Virus record (IMG/VR): IMGVR_UViG_3300037042_006844
Location: 1-64,000 of that record
Length of the DNA: 64,000 nt
Reading direction: 5' to 3' (one strand)
Shown here: piece by piece, positions 734 through 61,789 of the stretch
How positions within the stretch are numbered: the stretch's first letter is position 1
Layout of the letters: every line of letters starts with the position of its first letter
Made by a program: the position numbers and the translations under genes
Notes under the pieces: generated by a model
Databases searched by the model: none
The model's input: only the letters and a program-made list of their open reading frames with translations
What the model was told of the DNA's origin: nothing

Positions 734-741
734 TATAAATA
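734..741 (-). promoter_or_regulatory. Representative copy of the recurrent sense-strand TATTTAT(A/T) box (putative late promoter)
   Basis: The same box occurs upstream of minus-strand genes at 1942, 2567, 6529, 9852, 10069, 11535, 13734, 18907, 20409, 22964, 30559, 36296, 42515, 44954, 46153 and 61725. It occurs in the opposite orientation before the plus-strand genes, at 11565 and 18948. Confidence 0.75.
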
Positions 742-770
742 TGAATGGAAATCAATATTTGTTGTTTTTT

Positions 771-1934
771 TTATATTTTGTTGATATCCGCATCAATCAA
801 ATTATTAATGGTCGAACGTAATTTGCTGATATATCCACTTGCTCGCAGCAGTTTGAACACCAAATTCTCAGTGCTATATTCACCACCCGTGCTTAAACCT
901 GTTTCGCGCATATTAAATAAACGCTTAACCATGTCTTTGAGAGAATCAACACGATTCGTTTTGATAACAGCGGCGATCTCATCAGTAAATTGTTTGTATT
1001 TCTTTTTGATGGCATCTTTGTCGATTTGCACATCTTCGTGTTTTGGCTGTTTGACCCATTCATTATTGAGAATACTATATACAGCTTGGCTTCGATTTAC
1101 ATCGGCAATGTCTTGGATGTATATTTCGACCGGATGCTCATTGATGTGAATATCGTGATGCTCGTTCCACTTGTTTTTATAGCCATCCACAAGCTTTTTT
1201 ACCAGTTCCTTGTTTGGATCGATCTTGCTGAAATCGATCAAAACATGCAAATCGATATCGCTTGTTGGAGTCCAATTATAACCAGCAGTGCTACCAAGAA
1301 ACAAAACATCCTCGATTGGCGCGGTAAGTTCTGTATCTTTGTAGAAAGTAGTGGCAGTTTTTAGCAGCATATCCAGCATTTCTGGCTTGAGAGTGTTTCC
1401 TTCCCAAATCTCTGGATTAAGAATACTGTTGTATAGTCTGAATTTTTCTTTTACACCCAAAATCTCTTTGAGCTTGTTAATGGTATCAGTGGCACTGGTA
1501 TGTAACAGCCCAATGCCCCCAGCGGCTTTGAATTCATCTATTACGTCCTGTCTGTCATCTATCATGATGGCATCGGGTCCGGCGAACTTAGCCTTATCTT
1601 CCCTGTGAGAAACTAAATTAGGTTTGAAAGTTATACCGTGCTTTTTCAACCATGCTGTTTTTCCGACATTGCTTTCTGGATTGGATGAGTGACTCAAAAT
1701 TTCAGTTGGTAGCTCTTTGACAAAATTGTAAAGAACTTTTCCATCCCTCATCCAAGGCGCATCAGCATAAAAAGCAGGGCTGTTTTTGTGAACAAGCTCA
1801 TAGGTTTGTTTTTTACCATGCTCGGCTTCATATGCTGCTGGAGACCTTCCATCACTGTAATGTTCAAACTGTTTCTCCCAGTCAACTATGACTCCATCCA
1901 TGTCAAGATAGATTTTATACTTACTGTGTATCAT
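771..1934 (-). CDS. HAD-family 5'(3')-nucleotidase-like domain fused to a pol-beta-superfamily nucleotidyltransferase
   Basis: N-terminal YLDMDGV (HAD motif I), K..W and MIDDR (motif IV); C-terminal LGSTAGYNW..SDIDLH (GS + DxD) and VEIYIQD. Confidence 0.8.
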   Translation of the reverse strand: MIHSKYKIYLDMDGVIVDWEKQFEHYSDGRSPAAYEAEHGKKQTYELVHKNSPAFYADAPWMRDGKVLYNFVKELPTEILSHSSNPESNVGKTAWLKKHGITFKPNLVSHREDKAKFAGPDAIMIDDRQDVIDEFKAAGGIGLLHTSATDTINKLKEILGVKEKFRLYNSILNPEIWEGNTLKPEMLDMLLKTATTFYKDTELTAPIEDVLFLGSTAGYNWTPTSDIDLHVLIDFSKIDPNKELVKKLVDGYKNKWNEHHDIHINEHPVEIYIQDIADVNRSQAVYSILNNEWVKQPKHEDVQIDKDAIKKKYKQFTDEIAAVIKTNRVDSLKDMVKRLFNMRETGLSTGGEYSTENLVFKLLRASGYISKLRSTINNLIDADINKI

Positions 1935-2046
1935 CTGTTATAATAAATATATGCTACCTGCTTATTCTTCTAAGCCTAAGCTTATATTAGCTTCTTTAGT
2001 TCTAGTATTCATATTCTAAATAATTAACTAACTGAGCACTTCAAGC

Positions 2047-2250
2047 TCAATGCTTATAGCTTATGCTTTCTATACCTGGTCTGTCAAGATATAAGAAGTC
2101 CAAACCCACTGTTAAGTCTAATTTTATTTTGCCAGACTGGTATTTATAACGAAACAAGTCAAGAAACTCACATATTTCTTGACTTTCCCTATTTTCAGTT
2201 AAGGGTTCGTAATATGTGTTATCAGAATACTGCTCAAACCTGATGTTCAC
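2047..2250 (-). CDS. Small hypothetical protein
   Basis: 67-aa ORF (GTG start) preceded by a TACTTATT variant of the late box 4 nt upstream. Confidence 0.5.
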   Translation of the reverse strand: MNIRFEQYSDNTYYEPLTENRESQEICEFLDLFRYKYQSGKIKLDLTVGLDFLYLDRPGIESISYKH

Positions 2251-2268
2251 ATATAATAAGTATGAAGC

Positions 2269-2562: not shown

Positions 2563-2599
2563 ATGATATAAATACCGCAGGTTGCCCCGATCCGCATTT

Positions 2600-4033: not shown

Positions 4034-4046
4034 AATTCGTTATTTC

Positions 4047-6521: not shown

Positions 6522-6558
6522 ACTCTACAATAAATATGGAACACTCTGATTTCCCACA

Positions 6559-8034: not shown

Positions 8035-8037
8035 AGA

Positions 8038-8604: not shown

Positions 8605-8608
8605 GTTT

Positions 8609-9847: not shown

Positions 9848-9887
9848 TAAATATAAATATCGCTATGTTCGATATTAGTGCCAATTT

Positions 9888-10049: not shown

Positions 10050-10103
10050 AAACGATGCGTTCTTCGGGTATAAATATACCCCGTGCAACAAGAACACGCC
10101 GAA

Positions 10104-11511: not shown

Positions 11512-11576
11512 AGGTTTCCAACTCCGCCCTATAACATAAATAGGTTTTGGCTATAAAAAAACGATATTTATAATGT

Positions 11577-12530: not shown

Positions 12531-12535
12531 AAAGA

Positions 12536-12564
12536 TTGACGTTCACACAACTCTGTGCTAATAT
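12536..12564 (+). promoter_or_regulatory. sigma70-type promoter (extended -10) of the Mom-like gene
   Basis: TTGACG (12536-41), 17-nt spacer, TGc-TAATAT (12559-64); ATG follows 6 nt later. Confidence 0.7.
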
Positions 12565-12570
12565 AAAAAC

Positions 12571-13344: not shown

Positions 13345-13350
13345 AACCGT

Positions 13351-13728: not shown

Positions 13729-13742
13729 ATATTAATAAATAG

Positions 13743-13764
13743 AAAAACCCCAGCTGGGGTTTTT
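13743..13764. terminator. Perfect 22-bp palindrome (terminator-like), a near copy of the capsid terminator
   Basis: AAAAACCCCAGCTGGGGTTTTT read directly. Confidence 0.7.
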
Positions 13765-13779
13765 TCGTCATGTAGTTGA

Positions 13780-15768
13780 TTAAATTTCAACAATGGCCTC
13801 TCGTTTATTTGCAGAATTTTTATCAAAATGACTTGTGTTTGATACTATATACGAGTTTATATTGGTCCAATTCAGCCGTTCGCTTAATTCGCTGGACACA
13901 TTAATGTAACATTTCTTACCCGAATATTTTTCAATTGCGGCGATGAACGTATTTTTCCAATCATTAAACGATCCGTGCGCAGTGCTGTTGCTGTAAATCT
14001 CAAGATCGTAATACGGAATGCTAGTAAAAATCAAATCAAACCGACGATCTGTTGAAAACTCCTCAAATTTACAATTGTGAATTTCTACATTGGTTAAATT
14101 TGCATTTTTAATAAAAGTCTGCAATTCACCGAATGTTTCAACGTTTGGTTCACATCCGATATACGTGCCATTTGGATATTTACTCTTAAATCCCAATAAT
14201 CTGCCGCCAAATCCACAACACGGGTCCAATACCACAGGCGAGGCCGTGTCCCCCAAATATTTGTGATATATTGCGGCTGCTAATAGCGGCTTAAAAAATG
14301 AAACGGTTATTCTTCTGGCAGACAAACCCTGTATCAATTGGTGTAAACTAAAATCAAATATTTCGCCACTATTATTACAACCGATTCTGTATTTTATAAC
14401 ATCGTGCATGATAGATTCGTCCTCCCACGCAGTTTTCGGCGCAACGTTACCTTTATAACTCGCTCCCCAGTAAGAATGGAAATGATGCTTCAAATAATTA
14501 TTGCCGATTGAATAAATATTGTTTGAAAATTCATTGGATTGCGCATTGTAAATCGATGTATAATCATATTCTCTAATTTTGCGCATAACCAATTCTATGC
14601 TCTCATATAACGGGGGATATGGAAATTCCGGTTGGAAATTGCGAATGAATTTTTTAAGCAACCACAAAAATGACTCAACGTAAGGTTGACCTTTGTCGAT
14701 AATGCAATTTGAAAAATATTCTTTATTTATTACCACATCGTCATATCCTAATACCAAATGGTTAATTTTATTATAACATGCTATATTTTTGATCAAATCG
14801 GTCTCACTGCGCGAGTTCGTTATGAGTGCAGACAAATCACTTTCGCGAATTCTATAAATATTATCGATGGTATTATTTTTTTGGCGATCCGATATAACAC
14901 TAGATAGCAGCTTAAAATTCAAATTTTCAATATTTGTTGGATGCCAATATTCGCCATCGATTTCAATGCACATATTGTGATCCTGTAAATAAAAATCAAC
15001 AGACGCGGACCTATCACCACAATCAACTACGTATGGATGTTTATATTTAATATTAAGAGAATTTAATAATGATTCAAAACATAGTTCTGGTTCTGTATCA
15101 ATAGTATTTATGGCACATTTTCTATTAACTGCACTATCCGACATTTTTTTGACAGCAGTTCGTTTATGCGTTTTACCATACATCGGATTATTGATTCCTA
15201 TTGAATTGTGCCCGGTAATATAATCGATTCTATATGGGTAGTAGTTTAACAACTTAACCGTTTTACCACACCCACATTCACACAGTGGGTGTGTATTATT
15301 AAATATGTGTTGTTTGACATAGGTCGGTTTGTCCAATTTGTGTATTTTTTTAATGTGCCAGCCCAGCAAATTACCGGAAGCAAATTGTTCTCCACAGATC
15401 ACACACGAATGTTTATTTTCTGTAGACATTAACCTATTTTTATATTCAATATTTTTAAGTTTGGATGAGCGATATTCACCACAGCGAATAACATAATCAT
15501 CTGGCGATATGCTATGTGTGTCCCTCAGATGAACAAAAAATCCAACCGAAGAATACTTGTTATTGCACAATTTACACTCAATTTTATTGACAGACCTAAT
15601 ATGCGTTTTACTTTTTTGTTTTCTAAACTCGCCGTATTTACATGCGTATTTATCGGATGTCAGTGCATGTTTCCATTTCAAATGACTTGAAAAGCTGTAT
15701 AATGAAATTTTTTCGCCGCAAATATCACAAGATTTCAACGACGGTTTATTAACAATAGCGCGACTCAT
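13780..15768 (-). CDS. Zn-finger/NUMOD3/DUF559-like endonuclease fused to a C-terminal SAM-dependent DNA amino-methyltransferase (likely start MSRAIV at 15768)
   Basis: Three CxxC..H..H fingers, CECGCG, GINNPMYGKTH (NUMOD3-like), TEPE...VDFY...IEIDGEYWH nuclease core, VLDPCCGFGGRLLG (motif I), GCEPN, DLIFTSIPYYDLEIY (motif IV-like). Confidence 0.8.
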   Translation of the reverse strand: MSRAIVNKPSLKSCDICGEKISLYSFSSHLKWKHALTSDKYACKYGEFRKQKSKTHIRSVNKIECKLCNNKYSSVGFFVHLRDTHSISPDDYVIRCGEYRSSKLKNIEYKNRLMSTENKHSCVICGEQFASGNLLGWHIKKIHKLDKPTYVKQHIFNNTHPLCECGCGKTVKLLNYYPYRIDYITGHNSIGINNPMYGKTHKRTAVKKMSDSAVNRKCAINTIDTEPELCFESLLNSLNIKYKHPYVVDCGDRSASVDFYLQDHNMCIEIDGEYWHPTNIENLNFKLLSSVISDRQKNNTIDNIYRIRESDLSALITNSRSETDLIKNIACYNKINHLVLGYDDVVINKEYFSNCIIDKGQPYVESFLWLLKKFIRNFQPEFPYPPLYESIELVMRKIREYDYTSIYNAQSNEFSNNIYSIGNNYLKHHFHSYWGASYKGNVAPKTAWEDESIMHDVIKYRIGCNNSGEIFDFSLHQLIQGLSARRITVSFFKPLLAAAIYHKYLGDTASPVVLDPCCGFGGRLLGFKSKYPNGTYIGCEPNVETFGELQTFIKNANLTNVEIHNCKFEEFSTDRRFDLIFTSIPYYDLEIYSNSTAHGSFNDWKNTFIAAIEKYSGKKCYINVSSELSERLNWTNINSYIVSNTSHFDKNSANKREAIVEI

Positions 15769-15775
15769 GTGTATA

Positions 15776-15804
15776 ACTATACACGATACGCTAAGAAAAT
15801 GCAA
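15776..15804 (-). promoter_or_regulatory. sigma70-like promoter of the endonuclease-methyltransferase gene
   Basis: TTGCAT (15804-15799), 17-nt spacer, TATAGT (15781-15776); ATG follows 7 nt later. Confidence 0.6.
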
Positions 15805-15831
15805 TGTTTTTTGCGTATCCTTTCACTATAC

Positions 15832-15869: not shown

Positions 15870-15894
15870 GTGTTATTCTAATTCGCTAGATCAA

Positions 15895-17634
15895 TTATAC
15901 TTGATCAAGGTCGGCAACCAGAACTTTTCCATAAAATTCGGGTCTGACTACCTTCTTAGCGTAGCGGGTCATCACACCACGGCGTGGCGTGAAATTCACT
16001 GGATCATAGACCAGTGGAGTTTGGATAAGCGGAATGTATGGGGCATACACTGCGCCGGTTTCGAGGAAGTTATTTCCACGGAAACCAATCAAGATGACGT
16101 TATCGGTCATATATGGGTTCTTGTAGACTTGGAAGCGACTTGCGAAGCTACCAACTCGGGCAACGCCCATTGCGAACTTGGCTTGATCACCATCGGTGTT
16201 GACCACATATCCTGGGATACTTTCTAGAATAGTTGCCACATCTGGAGAACAAACGAGGAAGTTAGCACCACCACGGAGAGTCAATTTGTGGATCGTGTTG
16301 GATACCTTTTGAATCTTGTTGCCAAGAGTCTGGAACCAAGTTGATTTCACATATGCTGTGCGGTTAGCGGCTGTGTTCTGATTACGTGTGAATGAAGCAA
16401 CGTTGGTCGTTGCGTTCACAGTCTTGGTGAACTCAGTTCCGATTGCAGCACTCCATGCTTCGGTGGTGACACCGGTCACGGATTCGTTTAACATGTCGAG
16501 GATTTCGAGGTCGATTTCCATTGACACATATTCGCTCAACAGTGCAGTAAGTTCTGCTTCTGCATCGATGCTGTGGTAAGCATTCAAATCTTGAGCAAGT
16601 TCTGGAGTCCAGATTGCTTTCAATTTGCGGGTCTTAGCCACGATAGGTTCGCTCTTGAGGTCAAGGTTGACTTCAGGAATACCAAGGTCAGTTCCAATTG
16701 CTTGGGTTGCGGTTGCGGCAGCTTTACCAGAACCTTCACCGGCAGTTTTACCATCTTCGAAATCACCACGCAAATTGTCCGTGGGTTGAATTGTATAAAT
16801 CAATCTTGGAGTTGCTGCCGGGTATATTGTGGCAGATGATTGGCTGACGAACATGTTAATTTGATAGTATGGGTTTGCCAAGCTACCAGTATTAACTGCT
16901 GTTGCATAAGTGTTCAACACAGTGTATGCTGTGTTGTTTGCTTGTGTAAGGCCGAATGAACGAACTGCGTTCAAATCAACATTCCAAAGATATCCGTTTG
17001 CAGCAACGGTTCCAGTTTGGGTGTTGTCATCAAGATTCAATGTTACCTTGAAAATACCTTTAACTTTACTAGTAGATGCAACAACTGATGAGCTAAATGC
17101 GGTATCAAATTGGAGATCGTTCCAACTTGCAGATGCAATTGTAGCTGATGTGCATGTAGAACTGGTCACAAATCTCTCTGAGTATGCATAACGACCTTGA
17201 CCGTAAAGACCGTTAACTGCTGAGTCGGTTGAACCGAGCTTCTTTTGAGTTCCACCGAACAAGCTTTCGCCGCTGGTGTGACCCAATTGGTTGTTGCCAT
17301 ACTTGAAGTCCAAGTAGAAAATCAGACCGCTTGGGAGATTCATCGGTTGAACACTGACGAATTCTTTAGCAGCGATTTCTGCGAACACACGGCGAACGAG
17401 TGGGAGAGCTACGCCAGCCCATTGTTCACTGTTTGCGCTTGTTCCGGTTGAGGTTGCTTCGTCAAGCAATTGTTTTGCTTGATTTTCCAAGAGGATCGAC
17501 ATGTGCGCCTTTTCGGTGCCACGGGTGCCTTCGAGAAGACCCGTTCGTTCCCACTTGGTTTGTAGACCACGGGTTTCAGCCATCAGCTTCGCCTGTGGAT
17601 TCATGTTTCCTGTCAATAGACTTTTTACATCCAT
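15895..17634 (-). CDS. gp23: Major capsid protein (gp23-like)
   Basis: LPLVRR, VQPMNLPSGLIFYL, AKTRKLKAIWTPELAQDLNAYHSIDAEAEL, YAPYIPL, GVMTRYA hallmark motifs. Confidence 0.97.
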   Translation of the reverse strand: MDVKSLLTGNMNPQAKLMAETRGLQTKWERTGLLEGTRGTEKAHMSILLENQAKQLLDEATSTGTSANSEQWAGVALPLVRRVFAEIAAKEFVSVQPMNLPSGLIFYLDFKYGNNQLGHTSGESLFGGTQKKLGSTDSAVNGLYGQGRYAYSERFVTSSTCTSATIASASWNDLQFDTAFSSSVVASTSKVKGIFKVTLNLDDNTQTGTVAANGYLWNVDLNAVRSFGLTQANNTAYTVLNTYATAVNTGSLANPYYQINMFVSQSSATIYPAATPRLIYTIQPTDNLRGDFEDGKTAGEGSGKAAATATQAIGTDLGIPEVNLDLKSEPIVAKTRKLKAIWTPELAQDLNAYHSIDAEAELTALLSEYVSMEIDLEILDMLNESVTGVTTEAWSAAIGTEFTKTVNATTNVASFTRNQNTAANRTAYVKSTWFQTLGNKIQKVSNTIHKLTLRGGANFLVCSPDVATILESIPGYVVNTDGDQAKFAMGVARVGSFASRFQVYKNPYMTDNVILIGFRGNNFLETGAVYAPYIPLIQTPLVYDPVNFTPRRGVMTRYAKKVVRPEFYGKVLVADLDQV

Positions 17635-18811: not shown

Positions 18812-18960
18812 AATATAGTGTCCTTTTCTAGTTTTGTTGTGAAGTTATTGAAGAACTCCAAAGAAGATTTATCTGCACTGACATCAAAGACATTGATGTA
18901 TTTGATAATAAATATCGTATAAAAAAGGAAAATCGCAAAAATCTTTCTATTTATAGATAT

Positions 18961-20404: not shown

Positions 20405-20425
20405 ATGCTATAAATAGGGTATAAA

Positions 20426-22949: not shown

Positions 22950-23003
22950 ATAGTTCTATTAAATATAAATATGTATCACTTTACAAAATCATCGCGAATT
23001 GTG

Positions 23004-26000
23004 CTATTCCTTGATATTTGTTTCATCCATAAACGATTTTTCTTGTCCTTCTCGCAAAATTTCTTTTTGCCCGTCTACAGATTTTAACGCCGTTGCTAAT
23101 GATTCCATACTTTCCAACGACAACGGGGATTTTTTTCGGTATTTGTGTGCAGGACGCAAATCGCTACGAGAGTTGATTTCCAACGTTCCGAGTGGGTCTT
23201 CGCCAAACGGATAATCTCTAGCTTTTTTTCTACCAGTCTGATCGCGCTCTGTGAGTTTTGGTGCTTCTCCTCCAGCTGGTGCAGCACTAGCATCGGCACC
23301 GCCAGCTGCTTCTCCACCAGCACCAGCTTCTCCACCAGCCTCATCGCCACCTGGTGAGCCGCCCCCGCCTCCGCCGCTTTCATCACCGCCACCTTCCCCG
23401 CCAGCTTCACCATCACCTTTGGCTTTGAGAAACTCCAATGCGGGATCGTTACCTTCTTCTTCGATTTGTTTGAATCGATACATACCTTTCGCATCGTCCA
23501 CAAGCTCTTTTTGTAGCACAATCATGTCTTGATCGCTCATACCAAAAACATTATCATATATCCACTTCTTGCTGAATAGTTTTTGTTCCTGCATGTCTTT
23601 GGACACTTCGACTTTGCTTTTCCAAACGTCGATTTTTTCTTTTTCAAAAATCGTGGATGGGTTCGTCAGTTCCAAAGTGAAATCGACCAATGCTTCATCA
23701 CGGTATCCTTGACTATACAAATGCACCACCGCAATTTTGTTCAATTCGCTCACAATGATGCGTTGAACACGTTGAATGGTTCTGGCAAAACGAATATCTT
23801 CGGCGGCGAGCGTTGCTTTACCAGACAGTGCTTCGTCATATCCCAAAAATGCTTTGGGGATTTTGAGTGCCGCCATCATTTTGTTGCGCAGATATTCAAT
23901 ATCGTCAGTTCCTGTCCATTCAAGGCCTGGCAAATTCTCAATATTGGTTCCGCTATCGCCACCACGAACTGGAAGGAAAAAATCTTCAACCATGTTTTGT
24001 AGGTTGAAACGCAGATTGTAATCACCCGTGTTTTGATCCAAATATGGAGTCTTTTTCATTTGTTGAATAAGACGTTCCATATGGTTATCAACCTCATTTG
24101 GAGGAATATTACCAATGTCCACTTTGAAAATGCGTTTTTCGGGTGCTCGCATGATACGATGGATCAACATAGCGTCTTCCATCAAGCTCAACTGTTTCCA
24201 AACTCGTCGAGCACCTTCCAACATCGAATTATGAACGACTATTCCATTTGCTACAAAATTTGAATTTTCCGATTCAACTTGAATGTCATAAGTTGGTTGT
24301 ATCCCAATTGATTCTATAGATTTAATAGGGTCCAGAATAACACTATCACATCCAATATGAGAATATTTATGTAATTGCGTCTTTTTTAATCCATCCAAAT
24401 AGAAATATATGTAATATGACTTGGTTCTGTTACATGTTGTCCCACATATTATAGTTTCACCATCAAATCCTCGCTCTTTAACATTTGAACACTTAAATCC
24501 TAAACGAGATATCATACACTTGACATCTTCCACTAAAGTCTTATTATTTAATTCTAATGAATATCGATTTGAATTCCATTTATCCGTAAAAATAGACCCA
24601 TCTGCATCCACAAGTCCATTAATAAATGATAACTGCAACGATTCCGATAGTTGAAATACCCAGTATGGGATTCTTTTCGTGGTCGCTTTTCCTTTGAATC
24701 CGTTAATATACAAAAATTCAGCCAACATCTTAGATCCAACAACAGATTGGTCTCCGCTATTTTCGCCTCCTTCTATCAGTCTCGATTGTTTGTTTGCAAA
24801 CTTTTCAAGTAGTGTTGTGTATTTATCATTCAATTCCAAGTTTACACCCCTCGCAAAACACACAGTATCCATTGCTTTGTTCAACCATCCATCACCAAAC
24901 ATGAACCCAAAAAATTCCATGAAATCGTTGGTAGGGTTAACAGGCAACGAGGTTATATCCGATTTCCATCCGTTATGGTTTGATGTGGTAATAAAATCTG
25001 TGCTAAGTTTTATGTCTGCTCTGGATGACATCGATTTATTGTTAAGAACCAATAAGTCTGTTATTGCCAAATCCCCGGCATTTTTATATACAAATACATC
25101 ATCAGAATATACCAAAATAGGATGTGTATCTGTGCATTCGATTGAATTGTGTTGGGTGCTTATTTTATAAGTATGTTTGTCCCCAGAAGCAATCGAATTA
25201 AGAACTGTCGATAATTCATATGTTCTACTTTCTACATTATAAGTCCATACTTTATCACCCACCGCAATTTCGTTTATGCGTTTCGCACCAAATTCCATGT
25301 CCACATATGAGTTTTTTGCCAAACATTTTCCATATGGCAGAAAATTACTGTCATTTAGCAAACGGAAATGCGCCATTTGATAATTCTCAAGGTCTTCAAT
25401 TTTATTGCCGTATGGAAGATTGACTTGGAATTTGGTAAAGTTTTTGTTGGTCAAATGAGAGTTCTCAACGCGGGTGACATAGTATGAACTAAGCGGCTCC
25501 ACCATGTAAACGCCGTATTCTGGACTGATGTGCATTCTCAAATAGAAATCGCCATATTTAGCCAAACTGCGGGTCCAACTCCAAAGATTGAACTCGATAT
25601 TGAGGATGTCATAAAACAAATTGTTTAGAACGCTTTTGATGTCATCATTGCTGCTACGAACCGTGATCACCTCTCCAAGCTCATTGCGAGTGGTGCATTC
25701 GTCGGCATAAATGTCCAGAGCGGATGCCAAAATCGGGTCCATATCCATAGTATTTCCACAGATTACACTATCAGTTGCAAAGTTATGATATTCCTCCACC
25801 GTAACATCATAGACATCCGTTTCACCTATCATTTCAATAGATACTATTTTATGGTTTAATGTAGTTTCTACTTCCTGCTTGAAAGATTTCCAATCATGCC
25901 CCTCTTTTTTGAGACGATTTTGTAGAGTTGAATGATCGCAATGAATATGATCAATGAACTCCCATAAATTTATTTTTGAGTTTTCTTTATAAAACTCCAA

Positions 26001-26804: not shown

Positions 26805-26828
26805 AATGTGCTATCTTATATATAAGTA

Positions 26829-30554: not shown

Positions 30555-30577
30555 TAACTATAAATATATGACGAAAC

Positions 30578-30606
30578 AAAAAAACCCCGCCTTTTTAGTG
30601 GCGGGG
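30578..30606 (-). terminator. Terminator after the endonuclease-GNAT gene
   Basis: CCCCGCC-8 nt-GGCGGGG stem with a T-tract on the minus strand. Confidence 0.8.
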
Positions 30607-30634
30607 CTGTTTAGGCTATCTCAGTGTTGTCAAT

Positions 30635-32143: not shown

Positions 32144-32170
32144 ATACAATACTCCTTATCTAATAGATAC

Positions 32171-36244: not shown

Positions 36245-36353
36245 AATTTATGTTCCTTTCAAAGTTAACGCTAACTTTCGAAGTTATGTTTACTTTATAA
36301 ATATTGCCAAAAAAGTTGAAGCTCTAACTATTTATGTCAACTTCTCGTTTTTC

Positions 36354-39300: not shown

Positions 39301-40517
39301 GTATTGGGCACAGACACACAATATACATTTCCATCATATCTAACTTTTCGAATTTCTTTAATAGACGTGTTATTCACCGTATCAGTCAAATTAATATGCC
39401 CAGAATACTGTTGTTTGGAGTTTTCATAATTGCCAAATATAATTCTATCAGATTTTGTTGATGATGCTCCAATTAACCTGGCGATTGTATATAATATATC
39501 AATACTTTCTTTTGATATTGATGTAAAATACCAATAATTTTTACCATTTTTAGACAAACTCCCATCGCCATGTAAATAGCCGTCCATAAAACTTTTCAAT
39601 TCGGAATTTGTATGTGAAAAAATAGATGGCGGTATTTCTTTTTTATTATTGAAAAATTTACATATGTCTTTTGCCAAACTTTCATAAACAACAATGAAAA
39701 CTGATCCATCTTTTTGAGGTCTGGTTTTTGTTGTATAGTTTAATTTTTTTAATATATTCTCTAAATAAGTTATTTCCCGTTCACATTTGAGATGGAATTG
39801 AACTCGGCATCCATCAAATTTATTTTCATCGGTGTTATTTACATGGTCTCTTAAAACAAAAGTTCCTTCTGCGAAAGAGAATCCCAGCAACTTAAAAAAT
39901 GGGCTTTCTGCGTAATTATTAACAATGCCATTAATTGGAATTAATCCCGTAAGAGGAACATCTTTTGCTTCTTTTTTATAAAATTTATCGGTTTGAGTGT
40001 GATAATACAACATCTGATGTGTCGGAGTAACTAATATATCTGTTTTCTTACCAAGAAAATTATACATGGCTCCGTCGGATCGTTTGATTATTGTTTCACT
40101 TGGGGATTGAAATTCAATTTCCTTTGTATCAACATTGAATGTGGCGATTTTATCCATGCTTTTATTTTCAACATATTTTTTAATGTTGACCCATCCGGAT
40201 TGAGTCAATAGTTCATGATCTTCACTATAACAATCGTGATTGCCAGCAATGAGAATGGTGGGCATTCTATCTGCACACCCTTTCAGAAAATCCCCACCTA
40301 TTTTTACGCACTCTGGACTCAGATCGCTTTTGTTGTGAAACACGTCGCCAGTGATCACACAAATTCCAGCTGCATTTTTACTCAGCCTATCTAGAGCCAA
40401 ATAAAACCGATCAAAAACAGTTGTGTATTCGTCGTGCCGTTTGGTCAATCGGATGTGAATATCCGATACTTGCATTACGATGTCTATTTTTTTGTCTGTA
40501 TTTTTTAGCACTATCAT
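36354..40517 (-). CDS. Fused Mre11/SbcD nuclease-Rad50/SbcC ATPase (gp47-gp46 fusion) with an intein
   Basis: SDIH, GDVFH, GNHD, FHG, GDIH phosphoesterase motifs; APNASGKSS Walker A, CSYC hook, GSGMEK signature, ICIDEGFG Walker B, ISH. Confidence 0.92.
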   Translation of the reverse strand: MIVLKNTDKKIDIVMQVSDIHIRLTKRHDEYTTVFDRFYLALDRLSKNAAGICVITGDVFHNKSDLSPECVKIGGDFLKGCADRMPTILIAGNHDCYSEDHELLTQSGWVNIKKYVENKSMDKIATFNVDTKEIEFQSPSETIIKRSDGAMYNFLGKKTDILVTPTHQMLYYHTQTDKFYKKEAKDVPLTGLIPINGIVNNYAESPFFKLLGFSFAEGTFVLRDHVNNTDENKFDGCRVQFHLKCEREITYLENILKKLNYTTKTRPQKDGSVFIVVYESLAKDICKFFNNKKEIPPSIFSHTNSELKSFMDGYLHGDGSLSKNGKNYWYFTSISKESIDILYTIARLIGASSTKSDRIIFGNYENSKQQYSGHINLTDTVNNTSIKEIRKVRYDGNVYCVSVPNTNVLTRRNGLISICGNCMLSNKNRLDCLTPIVDALNHPNLYYLKPTDIFRYENILFNHFSVFDAPDKYIKYDNIPAKYRLETDHHIALFHGPVNNAITDVGYTVSNRAITNDLFDGHHIVMLGDIHKHQVLQEYDDGEGKPVIVYAGSMIQQNHGEELKGHGFLAWDLKRRLFKHYELSNDYGFYTVEISKGELLTDISNIPKKARIRTKCFETIPSQVKEVINTIKTKCEILESTFIRIDEYDTQASKIGQVLDIHSIFDADYQNTLIEDNLLAKKVDPELIEKVKQLNKTINTQIPKDKTPKNIRWKPKTFEFDNMFSYGEDNFIDFTQLKGTIGLFAPNASGKSSIMDALAFCVFDKFSKGYKAVNVMNTQKMSFSCKFNFEVSGVDYFIERKGAADKKGNVKVEVKFYKIENGNEIPLNGEARRSTNDIIRDYVGTYEDFILTVLSVQNSKAGSFVDLGQTERKDLLCQFMGLTVFDQLYNIANDNFRDTNTLLKNISKDQLVEELEHISGSIEINTAKIVDSNKQMADLEIKKEEWNGKLLELSNNITKADSFAHDITVLESDKIEFDKKIATTQNDISDQKAELANVERRIAELSGSLATCENIDVEYEQYKIDKAEESKTSSDIEKLKLVIRSKMDKLKKLEEHKYDPDCSYCVNNVFVKDAIATKQDLDNERNRATAIVTLYNGIKQKVEKHGDIEVRYKECQRSNTEKTTLEKARSSFNNTILKLENALNDLQNKLKLVTDNIDIFYKNKDIIENNNKLLAEITDCKNSVKRVESDIKNTNNDLFKASTEKGKLELQYKNTTDQLKKVKELESTYETYKLYTSVISRDGIPYEVITKTLPEIEKEVNNILHQIVEFTVTLQTDGKNIMSNIVYEDRRWALEMGSGMEKFISGLAIRVALINISNLPRPNIICIDEGFGCADSDHLGQMGALFTYLKHQFDFIWIISHLDQMRDMVDMHLEIKKENGYSKISFR
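39255..40232 (-). mobile_element. Intein with LAGLIDADG endonuclease (326 aa) inserted right after GNHD of the Mre11 domain
   Basis: Starts CYSEDH, VTPTHQM block B, LLGFSFAEG and FMDGYLHGDG motifs, ends ISICGN followed by Cys. Confidence 0.9.
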
Positions 40518-41985: not shown

Positions 41986-42005
41986 TACCTAATACATAGT
42001 AATGA

Positions 42006-42494: not shown

Positions 42495-42525
42495 ATATTT
42501 CTAATGTTCCTTATAATAAATAGGT

Positions 42526-44949: not shown

Positions 44950-45016
44950 TTCCTATAAATATTGAGCAAAAACAAAATTCACTGGAAGTTTCAATATAAT
45001 AAACCCGGTTATTTGT

Positions 45017-46147: not shown

Positions 46148-46169
46148 CCCTATATAAATAGGATGTGTC

Positions 46170-47285: not shown

Positions 47286-47293
47286 ATGTTATC

Positions 47294-47935: not shown

Positions 47936-47981
47936 ATACAAATAATTATCAAGCTAATTCGGTTTTTTACCAAAATAGATA

Positions 47982-52469: not shown

Positions 52470-52473
52470 ATTG

Positions 52474-52947: not shown

Positions 52948-52948
52948 A

Positions 52949-54814: not shown

Positions 54815-54815
54815 A

Positions 54816-57208: not shown

Positions 57209-57211
57209 ATG

Positions 57212-57697
57212 TTAGGGTCTCTTTTTGTCGGCAACTTTTTTATCTATTGCCTTCATGAGCGAACGAAAATCGCGATTTATTACTGCGGCGACATTTTTTA
57301 CTGGCTCAGGAGCGGTTTCTGGAACAACCACGGGCATCGCAGTTTCGTTGATCAGTTCACTGGTGCTGCTACCACCAAAACCACCCATCATACTCGCCAT
57401 GCTGCCTTCTTGGGGAATGCCACCAGTGGTTTCATTCAAAATCGCATTCAATGCTGGGTTGTTGGTATAATTCACCCTCTTTTTTGGTCTTTGTGGAACA
57501 GACGGCAATTCTTCCGTTTCGACGGTTTCGTCCGAATCGGTTTCGTCCGAATCGGACGATGTCGGACGATTGGAGGGTCGATGTGCTTTTCCAGAAAAAA
57601 CCTCTGATAAATAACTGCGCACCTCTTGTCTCATGATGGGCTGCATTTCGGCTCTCACCATTTTAGCGATAATCTTTCTTAGTTGTTCGGCATTCAT
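57212..57697 (-). CDS. Hypothetical protein
   Basis: 161-aa ORF; includes a 15-nt tandem repeat near 57524-57555. Confidence 0.65.
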   Translation of the reverse strand: MNAEQLRKIIAKMVRAEMQPIMRQEVRSYLSEVFSGKAHRPSNRPTSSDSDETDSDETVETEELPSVPQRPKKRVNYTNNPALNAILNETTGGIPQEGSMASMMGGFGGSSTSELINETAMPVVVPETAPEPVKNVAAVINRDFRSLMKAIDKKVADKKRP

Positions 57698-57767
57698 AGT
57701 ATCTCTATTATATATAATTATTGGCGTTTGGCAGAATTCTTCAATTTTAATATAGTGGTTCTGGGTT

Positions 57768-59645: not shown

Positions 59646-59650
59646 AATAT

Positions 59651-61369
59651 TTATGTTGTGAATTCGAATTCGATTTGAACTGGACCTTCACGTCGATTGC
59701 GTCCTTTGAAATCTCCGAGAACACCAGCACCAGAAACAGTATTGATAATAACTGGGTCTGCGCACTCGCCCCCACTACCAGTTGGTTTGACACCATCGGC
59801 TCCTGGGGCATAGCCGCCGCCCGTTACGTAAACGCGTCTACTCAACGTTTTATGTAAATTATCACGCAACAATTTAAGTTTGATTTGCTGAACTGAAATT
59901 TGTGTTTGGTCTTGCACCGCATCTTTTGTGTTTACATCGGTAATTTGTCCAGCATCCTCGTGACCGTGCGGATGAGGATGGACGTGATGATACCAATGAA
60001 CGTGGTCTAGGAGCCAATTGCAAAGATCATATAGCCAATCGACCGTGGTTTGCCCCAACAATGCTGGTTCGTTTGTCTCACCATACTGACCTAAAAATAT
60101 TTGCGGTGCGTTGATGCAAGCGATACGATTGGTTGTGAGCACAATTTGATCGTTGGCATCCACCGTATACTCGGCATCTGTGGCTACACCATAGCGGCGT
60201 TTGCTGAAATGCAACGATTCCCCAAAACGACTGCTTAACACAATTCTGTCAGAATTGATAATCGTTTGCTCACCATTCAACACTGGCATTTGGAAACTGG
60301 TTGCCCCAGGAGGATTATATTGAACCTGTTCTTCAGTTCCATCACTCTGTTTGGTTATACCAAACATGCTTTTATAAACAGTCGTTGTCCATCTACTTAC
60401 AATCGGACCACTATTAATTTCTATCGTGGTTCCATCATTGTTGATATCTTCTTCAATTTGACCGCCATAATTTTTCTCACGGGGAGTGACCACGGGGATT
60501 GGAGGAAGTTTTGGGTGCAATTGCTGTGGCTTATCCAACGCAATATTTCTTTGCCGATTGCGAATGATAAGTCTCGGGTTGCCATAACCACCGTTCACAG
60601 AGTCTCTGAACAAGTTTGCATTCAATGCATACGATGGATTGCTGGACCTATCGTTTTGGCGACTGTCGTTGTAAGCCGTAAAACGAATGCTTTGACCAAA
60701 TCGGCTTTCTAATACAGTATCTCCTTCAAACTTTCGAACGCTACGAATAAACGGATTGAGAAGAAAATAGTCCCCAAGGAATCCAGTTTTTGTGATCGTT
60801 TTGAAAAATGGATGTGATAGATAGCTTTGTCGCAGTGGGTCTGGATTTGGCACCGATGGAATTGCACTGGAATTATTGTTGCTCAGTGCCTGCTCAGTGA
60901 CATAATCCGCATTGGTTCCAGTAAAATTAAATCTGTTAAACGGTTTGGTGTAGTAATAGTTTCCCGCCAATTTCAACACCATCACTTGTTCATTCAACAA
61001 TGGGTATTGTGTAACGGTATTATCCAATGGCATTGCCCAAGGCAGTTTATCCAATGGAGTTTTCTTTTCCAGTTCCAGGATGCGAATCTTGACTCGTCCG
61101 ATATAGCTGTAATCAATATCTTTGCTGTTGGGAACTTCATTTTTGTAATTGACTGGAATTTGCTGCGGGTTGACAGTTATTGGACCTTTCGAACGAAGGC
61201 TGTCTGGGTTTTTACTAAAAAACGGATGTTGATCATTGAGAATAACATCCACCACAACCGCAAGTTGGAAATTTGAGTTTTCGCCCGTCAAATTATCTGA
61301 GCCAGAACTTCTGCCAGATGGATTCTGAACTTGTAGGTATTTTGAAATGTTTGTTGATGAATCGCTCAT
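59651..61369 (-). CDS. gp5: Baseplate central spike/hub (gp5-like, no lysozyme domain)
   Basis: IGRVKIRI, YPLLNEQV (OB fold), FEGDTVLESRFGQSIRF, LNGEQTIINSDRIV beta-helix, His-rich tip. Confidence 0.75.
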   Translation of the reverse strand: MSDSSTNISKYLQVQNPSGRSSGSDNLTGENSNFQLAVVVDVILNDQHPFFSKNPDSLRSKGPITVNPQQIPVNYKNEVPNSKDIDYSYIGRVKIRILELEKKTPLDKLPWAMPLDNTVTQYPLLNEQVMVLKLAGNYYYTKPFNRFNFTGTNADYVTEQALSNNNSSAIPSVPNPDPLRQSYLSHPFFKTITKTGFLGDYFLLNPFIRSVRKFEGDTVLESRFGQSIRFTAYNDSRQNDRSSNPSYALNANLFRDSVNGGYGNPRLIIRNRQRNIALDKPQQLHPKLPPIPVVTPREKNYGGQIEEDINNDGTTIEINSGPIVSRWTTTVYKSMFGITKQSDGTEEQVQYNPPGATSFQMPVLNGEQTIINSDRIVLSSRFGESLHFSKRRYGVATDAEYTVDANDQIVLTTNRIACINAPQIFLGQYGETNEPALLGQTTVDWLYDLCNWLLDHVHWYHHVHPHPHGHEDAGQITDVNTKDAVQDQTQISVQQIKLKLLRDNLHKTLSRRVYVTGGGYAPGADGVKPTGSGGECADPVIINTVSGAGVLGDFKGRNRREGPVQIEFEFTT

Positions 61370-61380
61370 ACGGAGTTGTA

Positions 61381-61719
61381 TTAGCTTTTTGAGATGGAGA
61401 TCACGTTTTCCATCAATTGTTTGCGATCTTCGTCACTCAGAAGCATCGCTCCTCCCTCACCAGACGCATCTCCTTTGGAAACCAGTTTTTGAACGATGGC
61501 TGCAAGTTTAACGAGTTGCTCGTCGTTTTTCACGCCGACATCGTAATAATCTTTGATGAGAGGAACAATAATGACCGCGTCATTGACTGTTTTGATCAAC
61601 GTCCGCAATTCAGAAATAAGGATATCAATTTGATCTTTTTTGCTCTCCGAATTCTTAACGATATCTTTGCATAAGCCAGAAAAGTTCTTACCTTTATAAA
61701 TTTCAAAGTTTGTATCCAT
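61381..61719 (-). CDS. Hypothetical protein (helical)
   Basis: 112 aa; late box 5 nt upstream. Confidence 0.65.
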   Translation of the reverse strand: MDTNFEIYKGKNFSGLCKDIVKNSESKKDQIDILISELRTLIKTVNDAVIIVPLIKDYYDVGVKNDEQLVKLAAIVQKLVSKGDASGEGGAMLLSDEDRKQLMENVISISKS

Positions 61720-61789
61720 ATGTCAATAAATAGAAAAAACCAACCATTTTCACGATTGGTTTTGATTTTATAGTTCAAACACGACTGGG

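What the first reader, a model, noticed from the sequence alone, without database searches (positions are those of the whole stretch)
734..61732. Sense-strand TATTTAT(A/T) box, the inverse of the T4 late promoter, usually 4-7 nt before start codons
Seen: at least 18 intergenic copies. In 12 or more genes the box ends 4-7 nt before the start (2562, 6521, 9847, 13728, 20404, 30554, 44949, 46147, 61719, 1934, +11577, +18961). Longer leaders with an AAGGA SD occur before tube, sheath, scaffold and 42494. The box is absent before coupled downstream genes, and variants TACTTATW and TAATTATW occur at 2255, 26821, 47941 and 57713. Known: T4 gp55 reads TATAAATA on the non-template strand. Inference: a phage sigma with different specificity (candidate at 61790-62773) produces largely leaderless late mRNAs, or the box is an AU-rich translation signal. 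Caveat: the two divergent regions alone are ambiguous in orientation.
Basis: partly seen in the sequence, partly recalled or inferred. Interest (0 to 1): 0.65.

Follow-up and report, generated by a model that had tools for sequence, protein, structure and literature searches.

The report
Late-promoter box giving leaderless phage mRNAs
A freshwater T4-like jumbo phage marks its late genes with an exact TATTTAT(A/T) box that most likely serves as a promoter read by the phage's own diverged gp55-type sigma factor, and it sits so close to the ATG that about 45 messages should start at the start codon itself.

Summary
TATTTATW occurs 29 times in the window against 9.4 expected. In the whole 303.6-kb phage contig it occurs 110 times, 64 of them in the 14% that is intergenic.

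The box lies on the sense strand: 45 sense against 4 antisense in same-strand intergenic regions. It lies 3-8 nt before an ATG in 46 cases. It never precedes tightly coupled genes, and it tolerates almost no mismatch.

It is conserved in 80 related environmental contigs and in two cultured relatives. In the cultured relatives and in marine relatives it lies 11-36 nt from the ATG, in the marine ones with an AGGAG ribosome-binding site in between. That fits a promoter, not a translation signal.

It differs from the T4 late promoter TATAAATA only at the two central bases.

T4 gp55 is the top hit by fold (Z 10.8) and by PDB sequence profile. The protein carries an extra, possibly sigma-4-like domain.

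Host-type TTGAC-N17-TAnnnT promoters in the same genome also sit 6-9 nt before ATGs (42 cases), so leaderless messages look like a general strategy of this phage.

No transcript start sites could be tested, so timing and start sites are inferred. I rate it a new variant of a known kind.

The parts
61790..62773 (-). Gene for a diverged gp55-type late sigma factor, 327 aa. It has a variable basic N-terminal extension (residues 1-107), a gp55-like sigma domain 2 (about 108-210), and a C-terminal helix-turn-helix domain that may be sigma-4-like (about 230-325).
   Evidence: No Pfam or PHROG hit. The AlphaFold2 model of the core, built on 76 diverse homologues, has pLDDT 93.2. Its top hit among 48,161 PDB representatives is T4 gp55, 7d7d_F, at Z 10.8, rmsd 2.6 A over 94 residues. 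Ranks 2-33 are all sigma-type chains (sigma factors, pro-sigma K, phage AR9 polymerase), bar one engineered scaffold. A profile of the family against PDB sequences also puts T4 gp55 first, at a borderline E 0.033. hhalign against T4 gp55 gives E 1.2e-4 over 98 columns. The C-terminal domain matches the sigma-H C-terminus at Z 6.6 and SigA region 4 at Z 5.3.
1942..1949 (-). Box TATTTATT, 7 nt before the ATG at 1934 (387-aa nucleotidase-like protein)
2567..2574 (-). Box TATTTATA, 4 nt before the ATG at 2562
6529..6536 (-). Box TATTTATT, 7 nt before the ATG at 6521 (824 aa)
9852..9859 (-). Box TATTTATA, 4 nt before the ATG at 9847 (412 aa, weak head-tail adaptor match)
11565..11572 (+). Box TATTTATA, 4 nt before the ATG at 11577
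13734..13741 (-). Box TATTTATT, 5 nt before the ATG at 13728. It directly abuts a terminator hairpin at 13743-13764, so only 14 nt separate the hairpin from the ATG.
18907..18914 (-). Box TATTTATT with a leader of about 95 nt carrying a conserved hairpin and an AAGGA ribosome-binding site. It heads the scaffold gene (start 18811), with the major capsid gene (15895-17634) behind it.
   Evidence: The box is invariant in 21 relatives while the spacer between the two boxes varies.
18948..18955 (+). Box TATTTATA, 5 nt before the ATG at 18961. It forms a divergent pair with the box at 18907-18914.
20409..20416 (-). Box TATTTATA, 4 nt before the ATG at 20404
22964..22971 (-). Box TATTTATA, 14 nt before the ATG at 22949 (short leader)
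30559..30566 (-). Box TATTTATA, 4 nt before the ATG at 30554. A terminator hairpin lies just upstream at 30583-30608.
36296..36303 (-). Box TATTTATA, 51 nt before the sheath gene start at 36244, with an AAGGA ribosome-binding site in the leader
42515..42522 (-). Box TATTTATT, 20 nt before the ATG at 42494, with an AAGGA ribosome-binding site in the leader
44954..44961 (-). Box TATTTATA, 4 nt before the ATG at 44949 (807-aa FG-GAP repeat protein)
46153..46160 (-). Box TATTTATA, 5 nt before the ATG at 46147
61725..61732 (-). Box TATTTATT, 5 nt before the ATG at 61719. It directly follows a hairpin and T-run downstream of the sigma gene.
734..741 (-). Box TATTTATA, 25 nt before the ATG at 708, with an AAGGA ribosome-binding site in the leader
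26821..26828 (-). Variant box TACTTATA, 16 nt before the start of the intein-bearing portal gene at 26804
47941..47948 (-). Variant box TAATTATT, 5 nt before an ATG at 47935
57713..57720 (-). Variant box TAATTATA, 15 nt before the ATG at 57697
41991..41998 (-).
   Evidence: TATGTATA is the best single-mismatch variant genome-wide: 4 of 24 copies lie before an ATG.
12536..12564 (+). Comparison feature: a sigma-70-type promoter, TTGACG-N17-TAATAT, whose -10 hexamer ends 6 nt before the ATG at 12571. It is the early-class counterpart of the leaderless layout.

Best explanation
TATTTAT(A/T), preceded by A or C, is the -10-type element of this phage clade's late promoters. It is the counterpart of the T4 late promoter TATAAATA and differs from it only at the two central bases.

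Like the T4 element it has no -35 partner, and the consensus is kept almost without exception. It is most likely read on the non-template strand by the phage's own sigma factor, encoded at 61790-62773. That protein is a diverged homologue of T4 gp55 bound to the host core RNA polymerase. It also carries a C-terminal helix-turn-helix domain that may be sigma-4-like and may do the job that the separate protein gp33 does in T4.

The T4 box spans -13 to -6. A box ending 4-5 nt before an ATG therefore puts the transcript start on or within a base of the A of the ATG. About 45 genes of this phage, 12 or more of them in the window, would then be expressed as leaderless mRNAs translated from a 5'-terminal AUG.

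A minority of box promoters (scaffold and capsid, sheath, 42494, 708) have 20-100-nt leaders with an AAGGA ribosome-binding site.

Shown here: enrichment, strand, spacing, conservation, the sigma fold and homology, and the parallel layout of the sigma-70-type promoters.

Inferred, not shown: late timing, that this sigma reads this box, and the exact transcript start.
For: 1. Enrichment. 29 copies against 9.4 expected in the window. Genome-wide there are 110 copies, 64 of them in the 14% that is intergenic.

2. Sharp definition. 46 of 110 copies sit 3-8 nt before an ATG-led ORF, against a 3.3% background. Most single-mismatch variants fall to near background (the best, TATGTATA, 4 of 24), and the base before the box is A or C in 44 of 46.

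3. Orientation. 45 sense against 4 antisense in same-strand intergenic regions; only 3 copies in 9.1 kb of convergent regions.

4. Operon heads only. 0 of 43 box genes have under 15 nt of upstream spacer, against 102 of 274 others. Terminator hairpins lie just upstream at 19% of box genes against 4% at random positions. At 13728 and 61719 the hairpin abuts the box.

5. Start codon and ribosome-binding site. All 46 starts are ATG; none of the 43 box genes has a Shine-Dalgarno-like string.

6. Conservation.
- 80 related contigs (major capsid protein 64-85% identical) carry 738 boxes, 227 of them 2-9 nt before an ATG, with spacers of 4 (114) and 5 (58) most common.
- Both boxes in the scaffold/p182 divergent region are invariant in 21 relatives, while the spacer between them varies.

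7. Variable distance in relatives. TATTTAT is the top enriched upstream 7-mer in Flavobacterium phage immuto and Microcystis phage Mel-JY01, but there it lies 11-36 nt before terminase, portal and sheath genes. In marine relatives AGGAG lies between box and ATG.

8. Geometry. The T4 box spans -13 to -6 (PMC2988020).

9. Independent calibration. Of 152 TTGAC-N16-19-TAnnnT matches, 42 have an ATG-led ORF exactly 6-9 nt after the -10 hexamer, and at most 2 at any other distance. These promoters cluster at 104-161 kb, where boxes are few (5).

10. The sigma.
- T4 gp55 is the top fold hit: Z 10.8, rmsd 2.6 A over 94 residues, with ranks 2-33 all sigma-type chains bar one engineered scaffold.
- T4 gp55 is also the top PDB sequence-profile hit, at a borderline E 0.033.
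- hhalign against T4 gp55 gives E 1.2e-4.
- Among cultured phages, only immuto, Mel-JY01 and LR756508 have a homologue. Immuto and Mel-JY01, which infect hosts of different phyla, both share the box. That argues for recognition by a phage protein rather than a host one.
Against: - No transcript 5' ends are available. All 20 runs holding this sequence are DNA metagenomes.
- The host is unknown, so its ability to translate leaderless mRNA is assumed.
- The link from the sigma to gp55 is weak by sequence: no Pfam or PHROG hit for the window protein, and the immuto homologue scores only E 0.62 library-wide.
- LR756508 has a homologue of the sigma (44% identity) but no TATTTATW enrichment in the 41.6 kb around its capsid gene. 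The family does not always read this box.
- The sigma has a possibly sigma-4-like domain, yet no -35 element is conserved (information content 0.38 bit or less).
- 'Late' rests on the gene classes behind the boxes, not on timing data. Some box genes, such as the nucleotidase-like 771-1934, are not structural.
- My gene calls come from a home-made caller. The box-to-ATG counts do not depend on it.
Confidence: 0.7

Rival explanations
1. The box is an mRNA element. It would be an AU-rich translation-initiation signal, bound by protein S1 or a phage factor, that substitutes for a Shine-Dalgarno site in a genome poor in such sites. Transcription would start further upstream.
For: - The genome is poor in Shine-Dalgarno sites: 66 of 318 genes qualify even under a loose definition.
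- Leaders are A/U-rich, with U at -1 in about 70% of genes, including coupled ones.
- The box lies at a nearly fixed short distance from the ATG in this clade.
Against: - It never occurs before coupled genes, where a translation signal would be needed most (0 of 43 with under 15 nt of spacer).
- In relatives the same box lies 11-36 nt from the ATG, and in marine ones an AGGAG lies in between. In this genome 15 boxes lie 20-120 nt upstream, 10 of them with their own Shine-Dalgarno-like site.
- Mismatch intolerance, plus a conserved flanking A/C, is not what S1-type AU-rich enhancers show.
- Terminator hairpins abut the box, leaving no room for an upstream promoter.
- Sigma-70-type promoters of the same genome also end 6-9 nt before ATGs, so leaderless starts are needed anyway.
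Confidence: 0.08
2. The functional element is the T4-type TATAAATA on the opposite strand. It would fire away from the adjacent ATG, as antisense or divergent promoters.
For: - TATTTATA is the exact reverse complement of the T4 consensus.
- 21 copies lie in divergent intergenic regions, where either reading is possible.
Against: - In same-strand intergenic regions 45 of 49 copies are sense to the downstream gene. Read on the other strand, they would fire antisense into the end of the upstream gene.
- The W at position 8 and the A/C before position 1 are asymmetric and follow the sense reading.
- The tight spacing to the downstream ATG would be unexplained.
Confidence: 0.03
3. The box is a promoter element, but something other than the 61790-62773 protein reads it: host sigma with a phage-encoded appropriator or activator, or another phage factor. 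The gp55-like protein would serve a different promoter class.
For: - No experiment links this protein to this box.
- LR756508 has a homologue of the sigma without box enrichment near its capsid gene.
- The contig is estimated 89% complete, so other factors could be missing from it.
Against: - The box does not fit TAnnnT and has no -35. The phage's sigma-70-type promoters form a separate, spatially segregated class.
- The box is shared by phages of Flavobacterium and Microcystis, whose housekeeping sigmas read different promoters by established knowledge. Both phages carry this sigma.
- No other sigma was found in the genome: PF04542, phrog_234 and phrog_12791 all gave nothing.
Confidence: 0.15
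4. The box marks an RNA-processing site. A phage or host endonuclease would cut long transcripts just upstream of the ATGs, so the leaderless or short-leader mRNAs would arise by cleavage rather than initiation.
For: Primer-extension-type 5' ends cannot tell initiation from processing, a caution raised for T4 itself (PMC2988020). T4 does encode a sequence-specific mRNA endonuclease, RegB (my own knowledge).
Against: - Boxes follow terminators and occupy divergent intergenic regions of about 50 nt, where no upstream transcript in the right orientation is expected.
- The similarity to the T4 late promoter, and the presence of a gp55 homologue, fit initiation more simply.
Confidence: 0.04

Closest known systems
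T4 late promoter TATAAATA with gp55, gp33 and the gp45 clamp (Geiduschek & Kassavetis 2010, PMC2988020)
   Same: - An 8-bp A/T box in the -10 position, kept almost without exception.
- No -35 element.
- An A/T-rich stretch between box and start.
- Found before structural genes on either strand, often right after terminators.
- The phage encodes a gp55 homologue and a gp45-like clamp.
   Different: - The central AA is TT.
- Most boxes abut the ATG at 3-8 nt. T4 late mRNAs have leaders with Shine-Dalgarno sites (my own knowledge).
- The sigma carries an added C-terminal helix-turn-helix domain and a basic N-terminal extension.
- No gp33 similarity was found within the sigma. A separate gp33 gene was not searched for.
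Leaderless mRNAs from promoters that abut the start codon: lambda cI from PRM, the leaderless transcriptomes of Mycobacterium (PMC4633059), Thermus phage P23-45 middle and late genes (the first and last from my own knowledge)
   Same: - The -10 element ends 5-8 nt before an AUG.
- AUG is the only start codon used.
- There is no Shine-Dalgarno site.
- Both promoter classes of this phage show the layout.
   Different: Here a phage-specific sigma and a non-canonical box are involved, in a T4-like jumbo phage with an unknown freshwater host. The transcript starts are predicted, not mapped.
Two-domain (sigma-2 plus sigma-4) group 4/ECF-type sigma factors
   Same: A sigma-2 fold at Z 8-9 to SigW, SigK, SigC and sigma-E region 2, followed by a short linker and a C-terminal helix-turn-helix domain.
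   Different: No Pfam Sigma70_r2 or r4 match. The nearest structure is gp55, not an ECF sigma. The promoters show no -35 element.
Rhodothermus phage RM378 upstream motif TATTTAA (found here, not described in the papers I searched)
   Same: It shares the TATTTA core, lies on the sense strand, and sits 6-31 nt before ATGs of genes near the capsid gene: 9 genes against 0.4 expected.
   Different: The seventh base is A, not T. RM378 has no tblastn-detectable homologue of the window sigma. Its own annotated sigma shows no significant similarity to the family.

Membership tests
T4-type late promoter | Consensus TATAAATA on the non-template strand | tested here: not met
   The box is TATTTAT(A/T), matching at 6 of 8 positions. 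A sense-strand TATAAATA is rare before genes: only 4 of 49 copies in same-strand intergenic regions have that orientation.
T4-type late promoter | A single -10-type 8-mer kept tightly to consensus, with no -35 element | tested here: met
   Single-mismatch variants fall to background. No upstream column exceeds 0.38 bit.
T4-type late promoter | Precedes late (virion) genes | tested here: inconclusive
   Boxes head the scaffold and capsid, sheath, neck-like and baseplate-region genes, and a variant heads the portal gene. Boxes are few (5) in the 104-161 kb region rich in sigma-70-type promoters. There are no timing data.
T4-type late promoter | Transcript start about 6 nt downstream of the box, dependent on gp55 | not testable with these tools
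   No RNA runs hold this phage.
T4 gp55 family of late sigma factors | Sequence match to the family model (phrog_234) | tested here: not met
   The model finds nothing in this genome or in the complete relative G001. The immuto homologue scores E 0.008 in a single-family search but 0.62 library-wide.
T4 gp55 family of late sigma factors | Homology detectable by profile, and the gp55 fold | tested here: met
   T4 gp55 is the top PDB hit of the 76-sequence profile, at a borderline E 0.033, collinear over gp55 residues 6-159. hhalign gives E 1.2e-4. It is also the top structural hit of 48,161 chains: 7d7d_F, Z 10.8, rmsd 2.6 A over 94 residues.
T4 gp55 family of late sigma factors | Small single-domain protein with a C-terminal clamp-binding tail, working with gp33 | tested here: not met
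   The protein has an extra 90-residue helix-turn-helix domain and an N-terminal extension. The sigma shows no similarity to gp33. A clamp-binding motif was not identified.
Sigma-70 family | Sigma domain 2 fold | tested here: met
   Ranks 2-33 of the unbiased fold search are all sigma-type chains (sigma factors, pro-sigma K, phage AR9 polymerase), bar one engineered scaffold, at Z 6.4-10.3. The first, lower-confidence model gave the same picture.
Sigma-70 family | Pfam Sigma70_r2 or r4 match | tested here: not met
Leaderless mRNA | The -10 element ends 5-8 nt before the start codon, AUG is the only start codon, and there is no Shine-Dalgarno site | tested here: met
   Spacers of 3-8 nt (mode 4-5) after an element that in T4 ends at -6. 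All 46 starts are ATG; none of the 43 box genes has a Shine-Dalgarno-like string. The sigma-70-type promoters show the same layout in 42 cases.
Leaderless mRNA | The 5' triphosphate end lies at the A of the AUG | not testable with these tools
   No transcript data.
Translation-initiation signal (Shine-Dalgarno-like or AU-rich enhancer) | Present before internal genes of operons, at a conserved distance from the start codon across relatives | tested here: not met
   0 of 43 box genes are coupled. In immuto, Mel-JY01 and marine relatives the distance is 11-36 nt, and in the marine ones AGGAG lies in between.

The most novel reading that the evidence does not exclude
The 61790-62773 protein represents a very large, unannotated family of unsplit late sigmas: 2,038 clusters at 50% identity. 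In it a gp55-type domain 2 and a sigma-4-type domain sit in one chain. T4's gp55/gp33 pair would be the split or reduced form of this arrangement.

In one freshwater jumbo-phage lineage, this sigma and the host sigma have both been harnessed to an almost wholly leaderless transcriptome, about 90 first-in-operon genes. That would imply a host, or a phage-modified ribosome, that prefers 5'-terminal AUGs.
Probability: 0.3. Interest if true: 0.75.

Novelty: new variant of a known kind. Interest (0 to 1): 0.6.

Why it matters
- **Annotation.** It supplies a promoter rule (A/C-TATTTATW) and a sigma annotation for a widespread, so far 'hypothetical' protein family: 2,038 clusters, including cultured Flavobacterium and Microcystis phages. 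That allows operon and timing predictions in many environmental T4-like phages.
- **Evolution of the system.** The T4 late-transcription system appears to exist in a form where gp55 carries a possibly sigma-4-like domain. This bears on how the gp55/gp33/clamp mechanism evolved.
- **Leaderless translation.** The phage seems to express about 90 genes from promoters abutting the ATG, in both the host-sigma and the phage-sigma classes. It is therefore a natural test case for leaderless translation in an unidentified freshwater host.
- **Testability.** The predictions can be tested directly in the cultured relatives.

Tried and rejected
- **gp55 and gp45 by direct search.** T4 gp55 and gp45 proteins found nothing in the genome. 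The models phrog_234, phrog_12791 and PF04542 also found nothing. phrog_234 found nothing in five related records, one of them complete.
- **Sigma candidate against libraries.** Pfam and PHROG scans of the candidate and its homologues gave no significant hit. The shallow 19-sequence profile against PDB returned only spurious RGS10 hits. The first AlphaFold2 model was poor (pLDDT 54). Foldseek E-values stayed above 0.01 for both models, probably because the two domains are free to move.
- **hhalign.** The shallow alignment against T4 gp55, and the family against the RM378 sigma, were not significant. The family against gp33 gave nothing.
- **Transcript data.** None exist: the 20 runs holding the sequence are lake, sediment and other freshwater DNA metagenomes. 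I did not use read laying, because contigs from DNA runs cannot show RNA ends.
- **Host.** Not identified. Six MAG contigs carrying the sigma are spread over Gammaproteobacteria, Saprospirales, Bacteroidales and even an archaeal bin, so they look like mis-binned phage DNA. The Bacteroidota promoter TAnnTTTG is not enriched in intergenic DNA. This argues against a Bacteroidota host despite the scarcity of Shine-Dalgarno sites.
- **U at -1.** I considered it as a mark of the initiating YR dinucleotide and dropped it, because it is equally common before coupled genes.
- **Literature.** Searches for TATTTATA as a phage promoter, and for promoter descriptions in Mel-JY01, immuto or RM378, found nothing relevant.
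- **Not attempted or not needed.** Complex prediction, because the host polymerase is unknown. No alternative genetic code was needed.

Full report
**What the window is.** The window is the first 64 kb of a single 303,564-bp viral contig with 41% G+C. IMG/VR classes it as linear and about 89% complete. It carries the structural module of a distant T4-like myovirus:
- the major capsid protein at 15895-17634, minus strand (phrog_138);
- a gp20-type portal interrupted by an intein at 23004-26804;
- the tail sheath at 32258-36244;
- an Mre11/Rad50-like fusion with an intein at 36354-40517.

The nearest cultured phages by capsid protein are Microcystis phage Mel-JY01 (51% identity), Flavobacterium phage immuto (59%, partial) and Rhodothermus phage RM378 (35%). 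The same DNA is found in lake-water and sediment metagenomes. No RNA run holds it.

- TATTTATW occurs 29 times in the window against 9.43 +/- 3.17 in dinucleotide-preserving shuffles, and no shuffle reached 29.
So are the leadered cases with AAGGA (708, 18811, 36244, 42494) and the TACTTATW and TAATTATW variants.
- In the whole contig there are 110 copies, 64 of them in the 14% of DNA that lies between my gene calls.
- Independently of any gene call, 46 copies are followed within 3-8 nt by an ATG that opens an ORF of at least 40 aa. The spacers are 3:8, 4:9, 5:16, 6:4, 7:5, 8:4. The background rate for random positions is 3.3%, and the other 20 permutations of the same letters give at most 8, the highest being shifted versions of the box itself.
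- The motif is sharply defined. TATTTATA scores 29 of 65 and TATTTATT 17 of 45. Most single-mismatch variants are near background; the best are TATGTATA (4 of 24), TAGTTATA (2 of 12) and TCTTTATA (2 of 17).
- The base before the box is A or C in 44 of 46 sites, and no upstream column suggests a -35 element.

**Strand and context.**
- In intergenic regions flanked by genes on the same strand, the box is sense to the downstream gene 45 times and antisense 4 times. Divergent regions hold 21 copies, and convergent regions hold 3 in 9.1 kb.
- No box gene has less than 15 nt of upstream spacer: 0 of 43, against 102 of 274 other genes.
- Terminator-like hairpins precede 19% of box genes, against 4% of random positions.
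- The tool scan confirms hairpins at 13764-13743 and 30608-30583. The first ends one base before the box, leaving 14 nt between hairpin and ATG.
- All 46 starts are ATG, and none of the 43 box genes has a Shine-Dalgarno-like string.

**Promoter or translation signal?** The comparison with relatives decides this.
- Eighty IMG/VR contigs whose capsid protein is 64-85% identical carry 738 boxes in 980 kb. Of these, 227 lie 2-9 nt before an ATG-led ORF, with spacer 4 (114) and 5 (58) dominant.
- In the divergent region between the scaffold gene and the 182-aa gene (window 18812-18960), both boxes are invariant in 21 distinct relatives, while the roughly 30 nt between them drift.
- In immuto and Mel-JY01, TATTTAT is the most enriched 7-mer upstream of genes. 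There it lies 11-36 nt before the terminase, portal, sheath and other genes.
- In more distant marine contigs, an AGGAG lies between box and ATG.
- In this genome, 15 intergenic boxes lie 20-120 nt upstream of a gene, and 10 of them have their own Shine-Dalgarno-like site.

An element kept exactly while its distance to the start codon varies, with a ribosome-binding site sometimes in between, behaves as a promoter and not as a translation signal.

**Relation to T4.** The T4 late promoter is an 8-bp TATA box, tightly kept, at the -10 position with its first base at -13. It has no -35 element and an A/T-rich segment downstream (PMC2988020). TATTTATA differs from TATAAATA only at positions 4 and 5. 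'Inverse' and 'two-base variant' describe the same thing, because the T4 box is nearly palindromic. If the box spans -13 to -6 as in T4, a 5-nt spacer puts the A of the ATG at +1, and a 4-nt spacer puts it within one base.

**An independent calibration from the same genome.** Canonical TTGAC-N16-19-TAnnnT promoters are strongly intergenic: 83 of 152 matches. Forty-two of them have an ATG-led ORF exactly 6-9 nt after the -10 hexamer (16, 10, 6 and 10 cases), against at most 2 at any other distance up to 30 nt. Six nucleotides is the standard distance from a sigma-70 -10 hexamer to +1, by established knowledge. These promoters therefore also predict leaderless messages.

They cluster at 104-161 kb, where boxes are few (5 box-to-ATG sites), whereas the structural region is rich in boxes. 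One lies in the window, at 12536-12564 before the ATG at 12571. The related contigs show the same layout, with 36 cases at 6-9 nt. Leaderless architecture thus looks like a general trait of this lineage, and the box is its late-class version.

**The sigma factor.** It also cannot be found with T4 gp55, phrog_234 or PF04542. The link to gp55 came in steps:
- A weak phrog_234 hit in immuto (E 0.008 in a single-family search) pointed to a 240-aa ORF. That ORF matches the candidate at E 4e-35.
- Eighty IMG/VR homologues show a conserved core, residues 108-327, behind a variable basic N-terminus.
- A profile search of 1.84 billion cluster representatives found 2,038 family members at E <= 1e-3 and 1,307 at E <= 1e-10.
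- With 76 diverse members, the profile's best hit in the whole PDB sequence set is T4 gp55, at a borderline E 0.033, collinear over gp55 residues 6-159.
- hhalign against T4 gp55 gives E 1.2e-4 over 98 columns.
- The AlphaFold2 model reaches pLDDT 93.2.
- In an unbiased structural comparison with 48,161 PDB chains, the top hit is again gp55: 7d7d_F, from the gp45-dependent activation complex, at Z 10.8 and rmsd 2.6 A over 94 residues. Ranks 2-33 are all sigma-type chains (sigma factors, pro-sigma K, phage AR9 polymerase), bar one engineered scaffold.
- The C-terminal domain resembles the sigma-H C-terminus (Z 6.6), SigA region 4 (Z 5.3) and TrpR-type helix-turn-helix proteins.
- It shows no similarity to gp33.

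In T4, gp33 provides the sigma-4-like activity (PMC4621102). Here that role may be built into the sigma; this is my inference. The genome also encodes a gp45-like clamp at 242919-243254.

Among 50,697 cultured or deposited phage records, only immuto (4 records), Mel-JY01 and LR756508 carry a homologue. Immuto and Mel-JY01 both share the box although their hosts belong to different phyla. That argues for recognition by a phage protein.

Two observations limit this argument. LR756508, whose homologue is 44% identical, shows no TATTTATW enrichment near its capsid gene. RM378 has no detectable homologue and uses a related TATTTAA motif, seen before 9 genes against 0.4 expected.

**Most likely mechanism.** The steps below are inferred unless marked as shown above.
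1. The gp55-like sigma replaces host sigma on the core polymerase.
2. It recognises A/C-TATTTATW as a -10-type element without a -35 contact and opens the A/T-rich spacer.
3. It starts at the A of the ATG at about 45 genes, and the 5'-terminal AUG is translated without a leader.
4. The most abundant virion proteins (scaffold and capsid, sheath, 42494) are made from box promoters with 20-100-nt leaders that carry AAGGA.

**What is not established.**
- Late timing is not established; it rests on the gene classes behind the boxes.
- No experiment shows that this sigma reads this box.
- The exact transcript start has not been mapped.
- The host is unknown. TAnnTTTG promoters are not enriched in intergenic DNA, which argues against Bacteroidota. 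The MAG bins that hold the sigma are scattered across taxa.

**Verdict.** I found no description of this box, this sigma family, or a leaderless late class in T4-like phages in the searchable literature. I rate it a new variant of a known kind: the T4 late-transcription system with a changed box, a two-domain sigma and leaderless targets.

Noticed in passing
whole contig G000:C1, including window 1-64000: GTAC is completely absent from 303.6 kb (575 expected) and GGCC is at 0.26 of expectation. Fifteen palindromic hexamers are absent, among them TTTAAA, CTCGAG, AGATCT, GCATGC, CACGTG and GTGCAC. This points to strong restriction-site avoidance and a host rich in restriction systems. It also explains why the box variant TATTTAAA never occurs here.
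   Followed up: partly
G000:C1 near 142952(+), 259088(+), 270575(-), 267036(-), 244047(-), 237393(-); loci L175-L178: Six copies of a conserved leader of about 55 nt lie between a sigma-70-type promoter and an ATG. The leader has a hairpin (CCTCTTGG...CCGAAGAGG) that carries compensatory changes in two copies, and CCTCC / CCTTCCTCC tracts that resemble the anti-Shine-Dalgarno sequence. There is no Rfam or tRNA match. It may be a translational control element of a set of early genes.
   Followed up: partly
window 18812-18906 (minus strand), and the same region in L004-L042: The leader of about 95 nt before the scaffold gene, with the capsid gene behind it, is conserved across 21 relatives far better than the neighbouring promoter spacer. 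It holds a hairpin (CATCAATG..TTTGATG) right after the predicted start and an invariant block TCTTCTTTGGAGTTCT.
   Followed up: no
window 23004-26804 and 36354-40517: The portal gene carries an intein with a LAGLIDADG domain. An Mre11-like phosphoesterase and a Rad50/SMC-like ATPase (the gp47 and gp46 analogues) are fused in one 1387-aa ORF that also holds an intein splicing domain.
   Followed up: no
window 30635-32149 and 13780-15804: Free-standing HNH homing-endonuclease genes sit among the structural genes. The one starting near 32143 has its own sigma-70-type promoter (TTGACA-N17-TAATAT at about 32198) and an AAGGA leader, instead of a box.
   Followed up: no
whole contig; window examples: Genes without a box or Shine-Dalgarno site, including tightly coupled ones, have U at -1 in about 70% of cases and A-rich upstream regions. 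Shine-Dalgarno-like strings are rare: 66 of 318 genes under a loose definition.
   Followed up: partly
L083 (Microcystis phage Mel-JY01) 17185-17412: Mel-JY01 encodes ribosomal protein bS21 inside its head-gene cluster, according to the record's annotation. I did not check whether this phage has one.
   Followed up: no
window 10069-10076 (minus strand): One intergenic box, between the genes ending at 9847 and starting at 10104, has no obvious ORF behind it. It is an orphan promoter, or it heads a small unannotated gene or RNA.
   Followed up: no
L172 (Rhodothermus phage RM378): TATTTAA is the top enriched upstream 7-mer, seen before 9 genes against 0.4 expected, 6-31 nt before ATGs. It is probably RM378's late promoter. 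I did not find it described in the papers I searched.
   Followed up: partly
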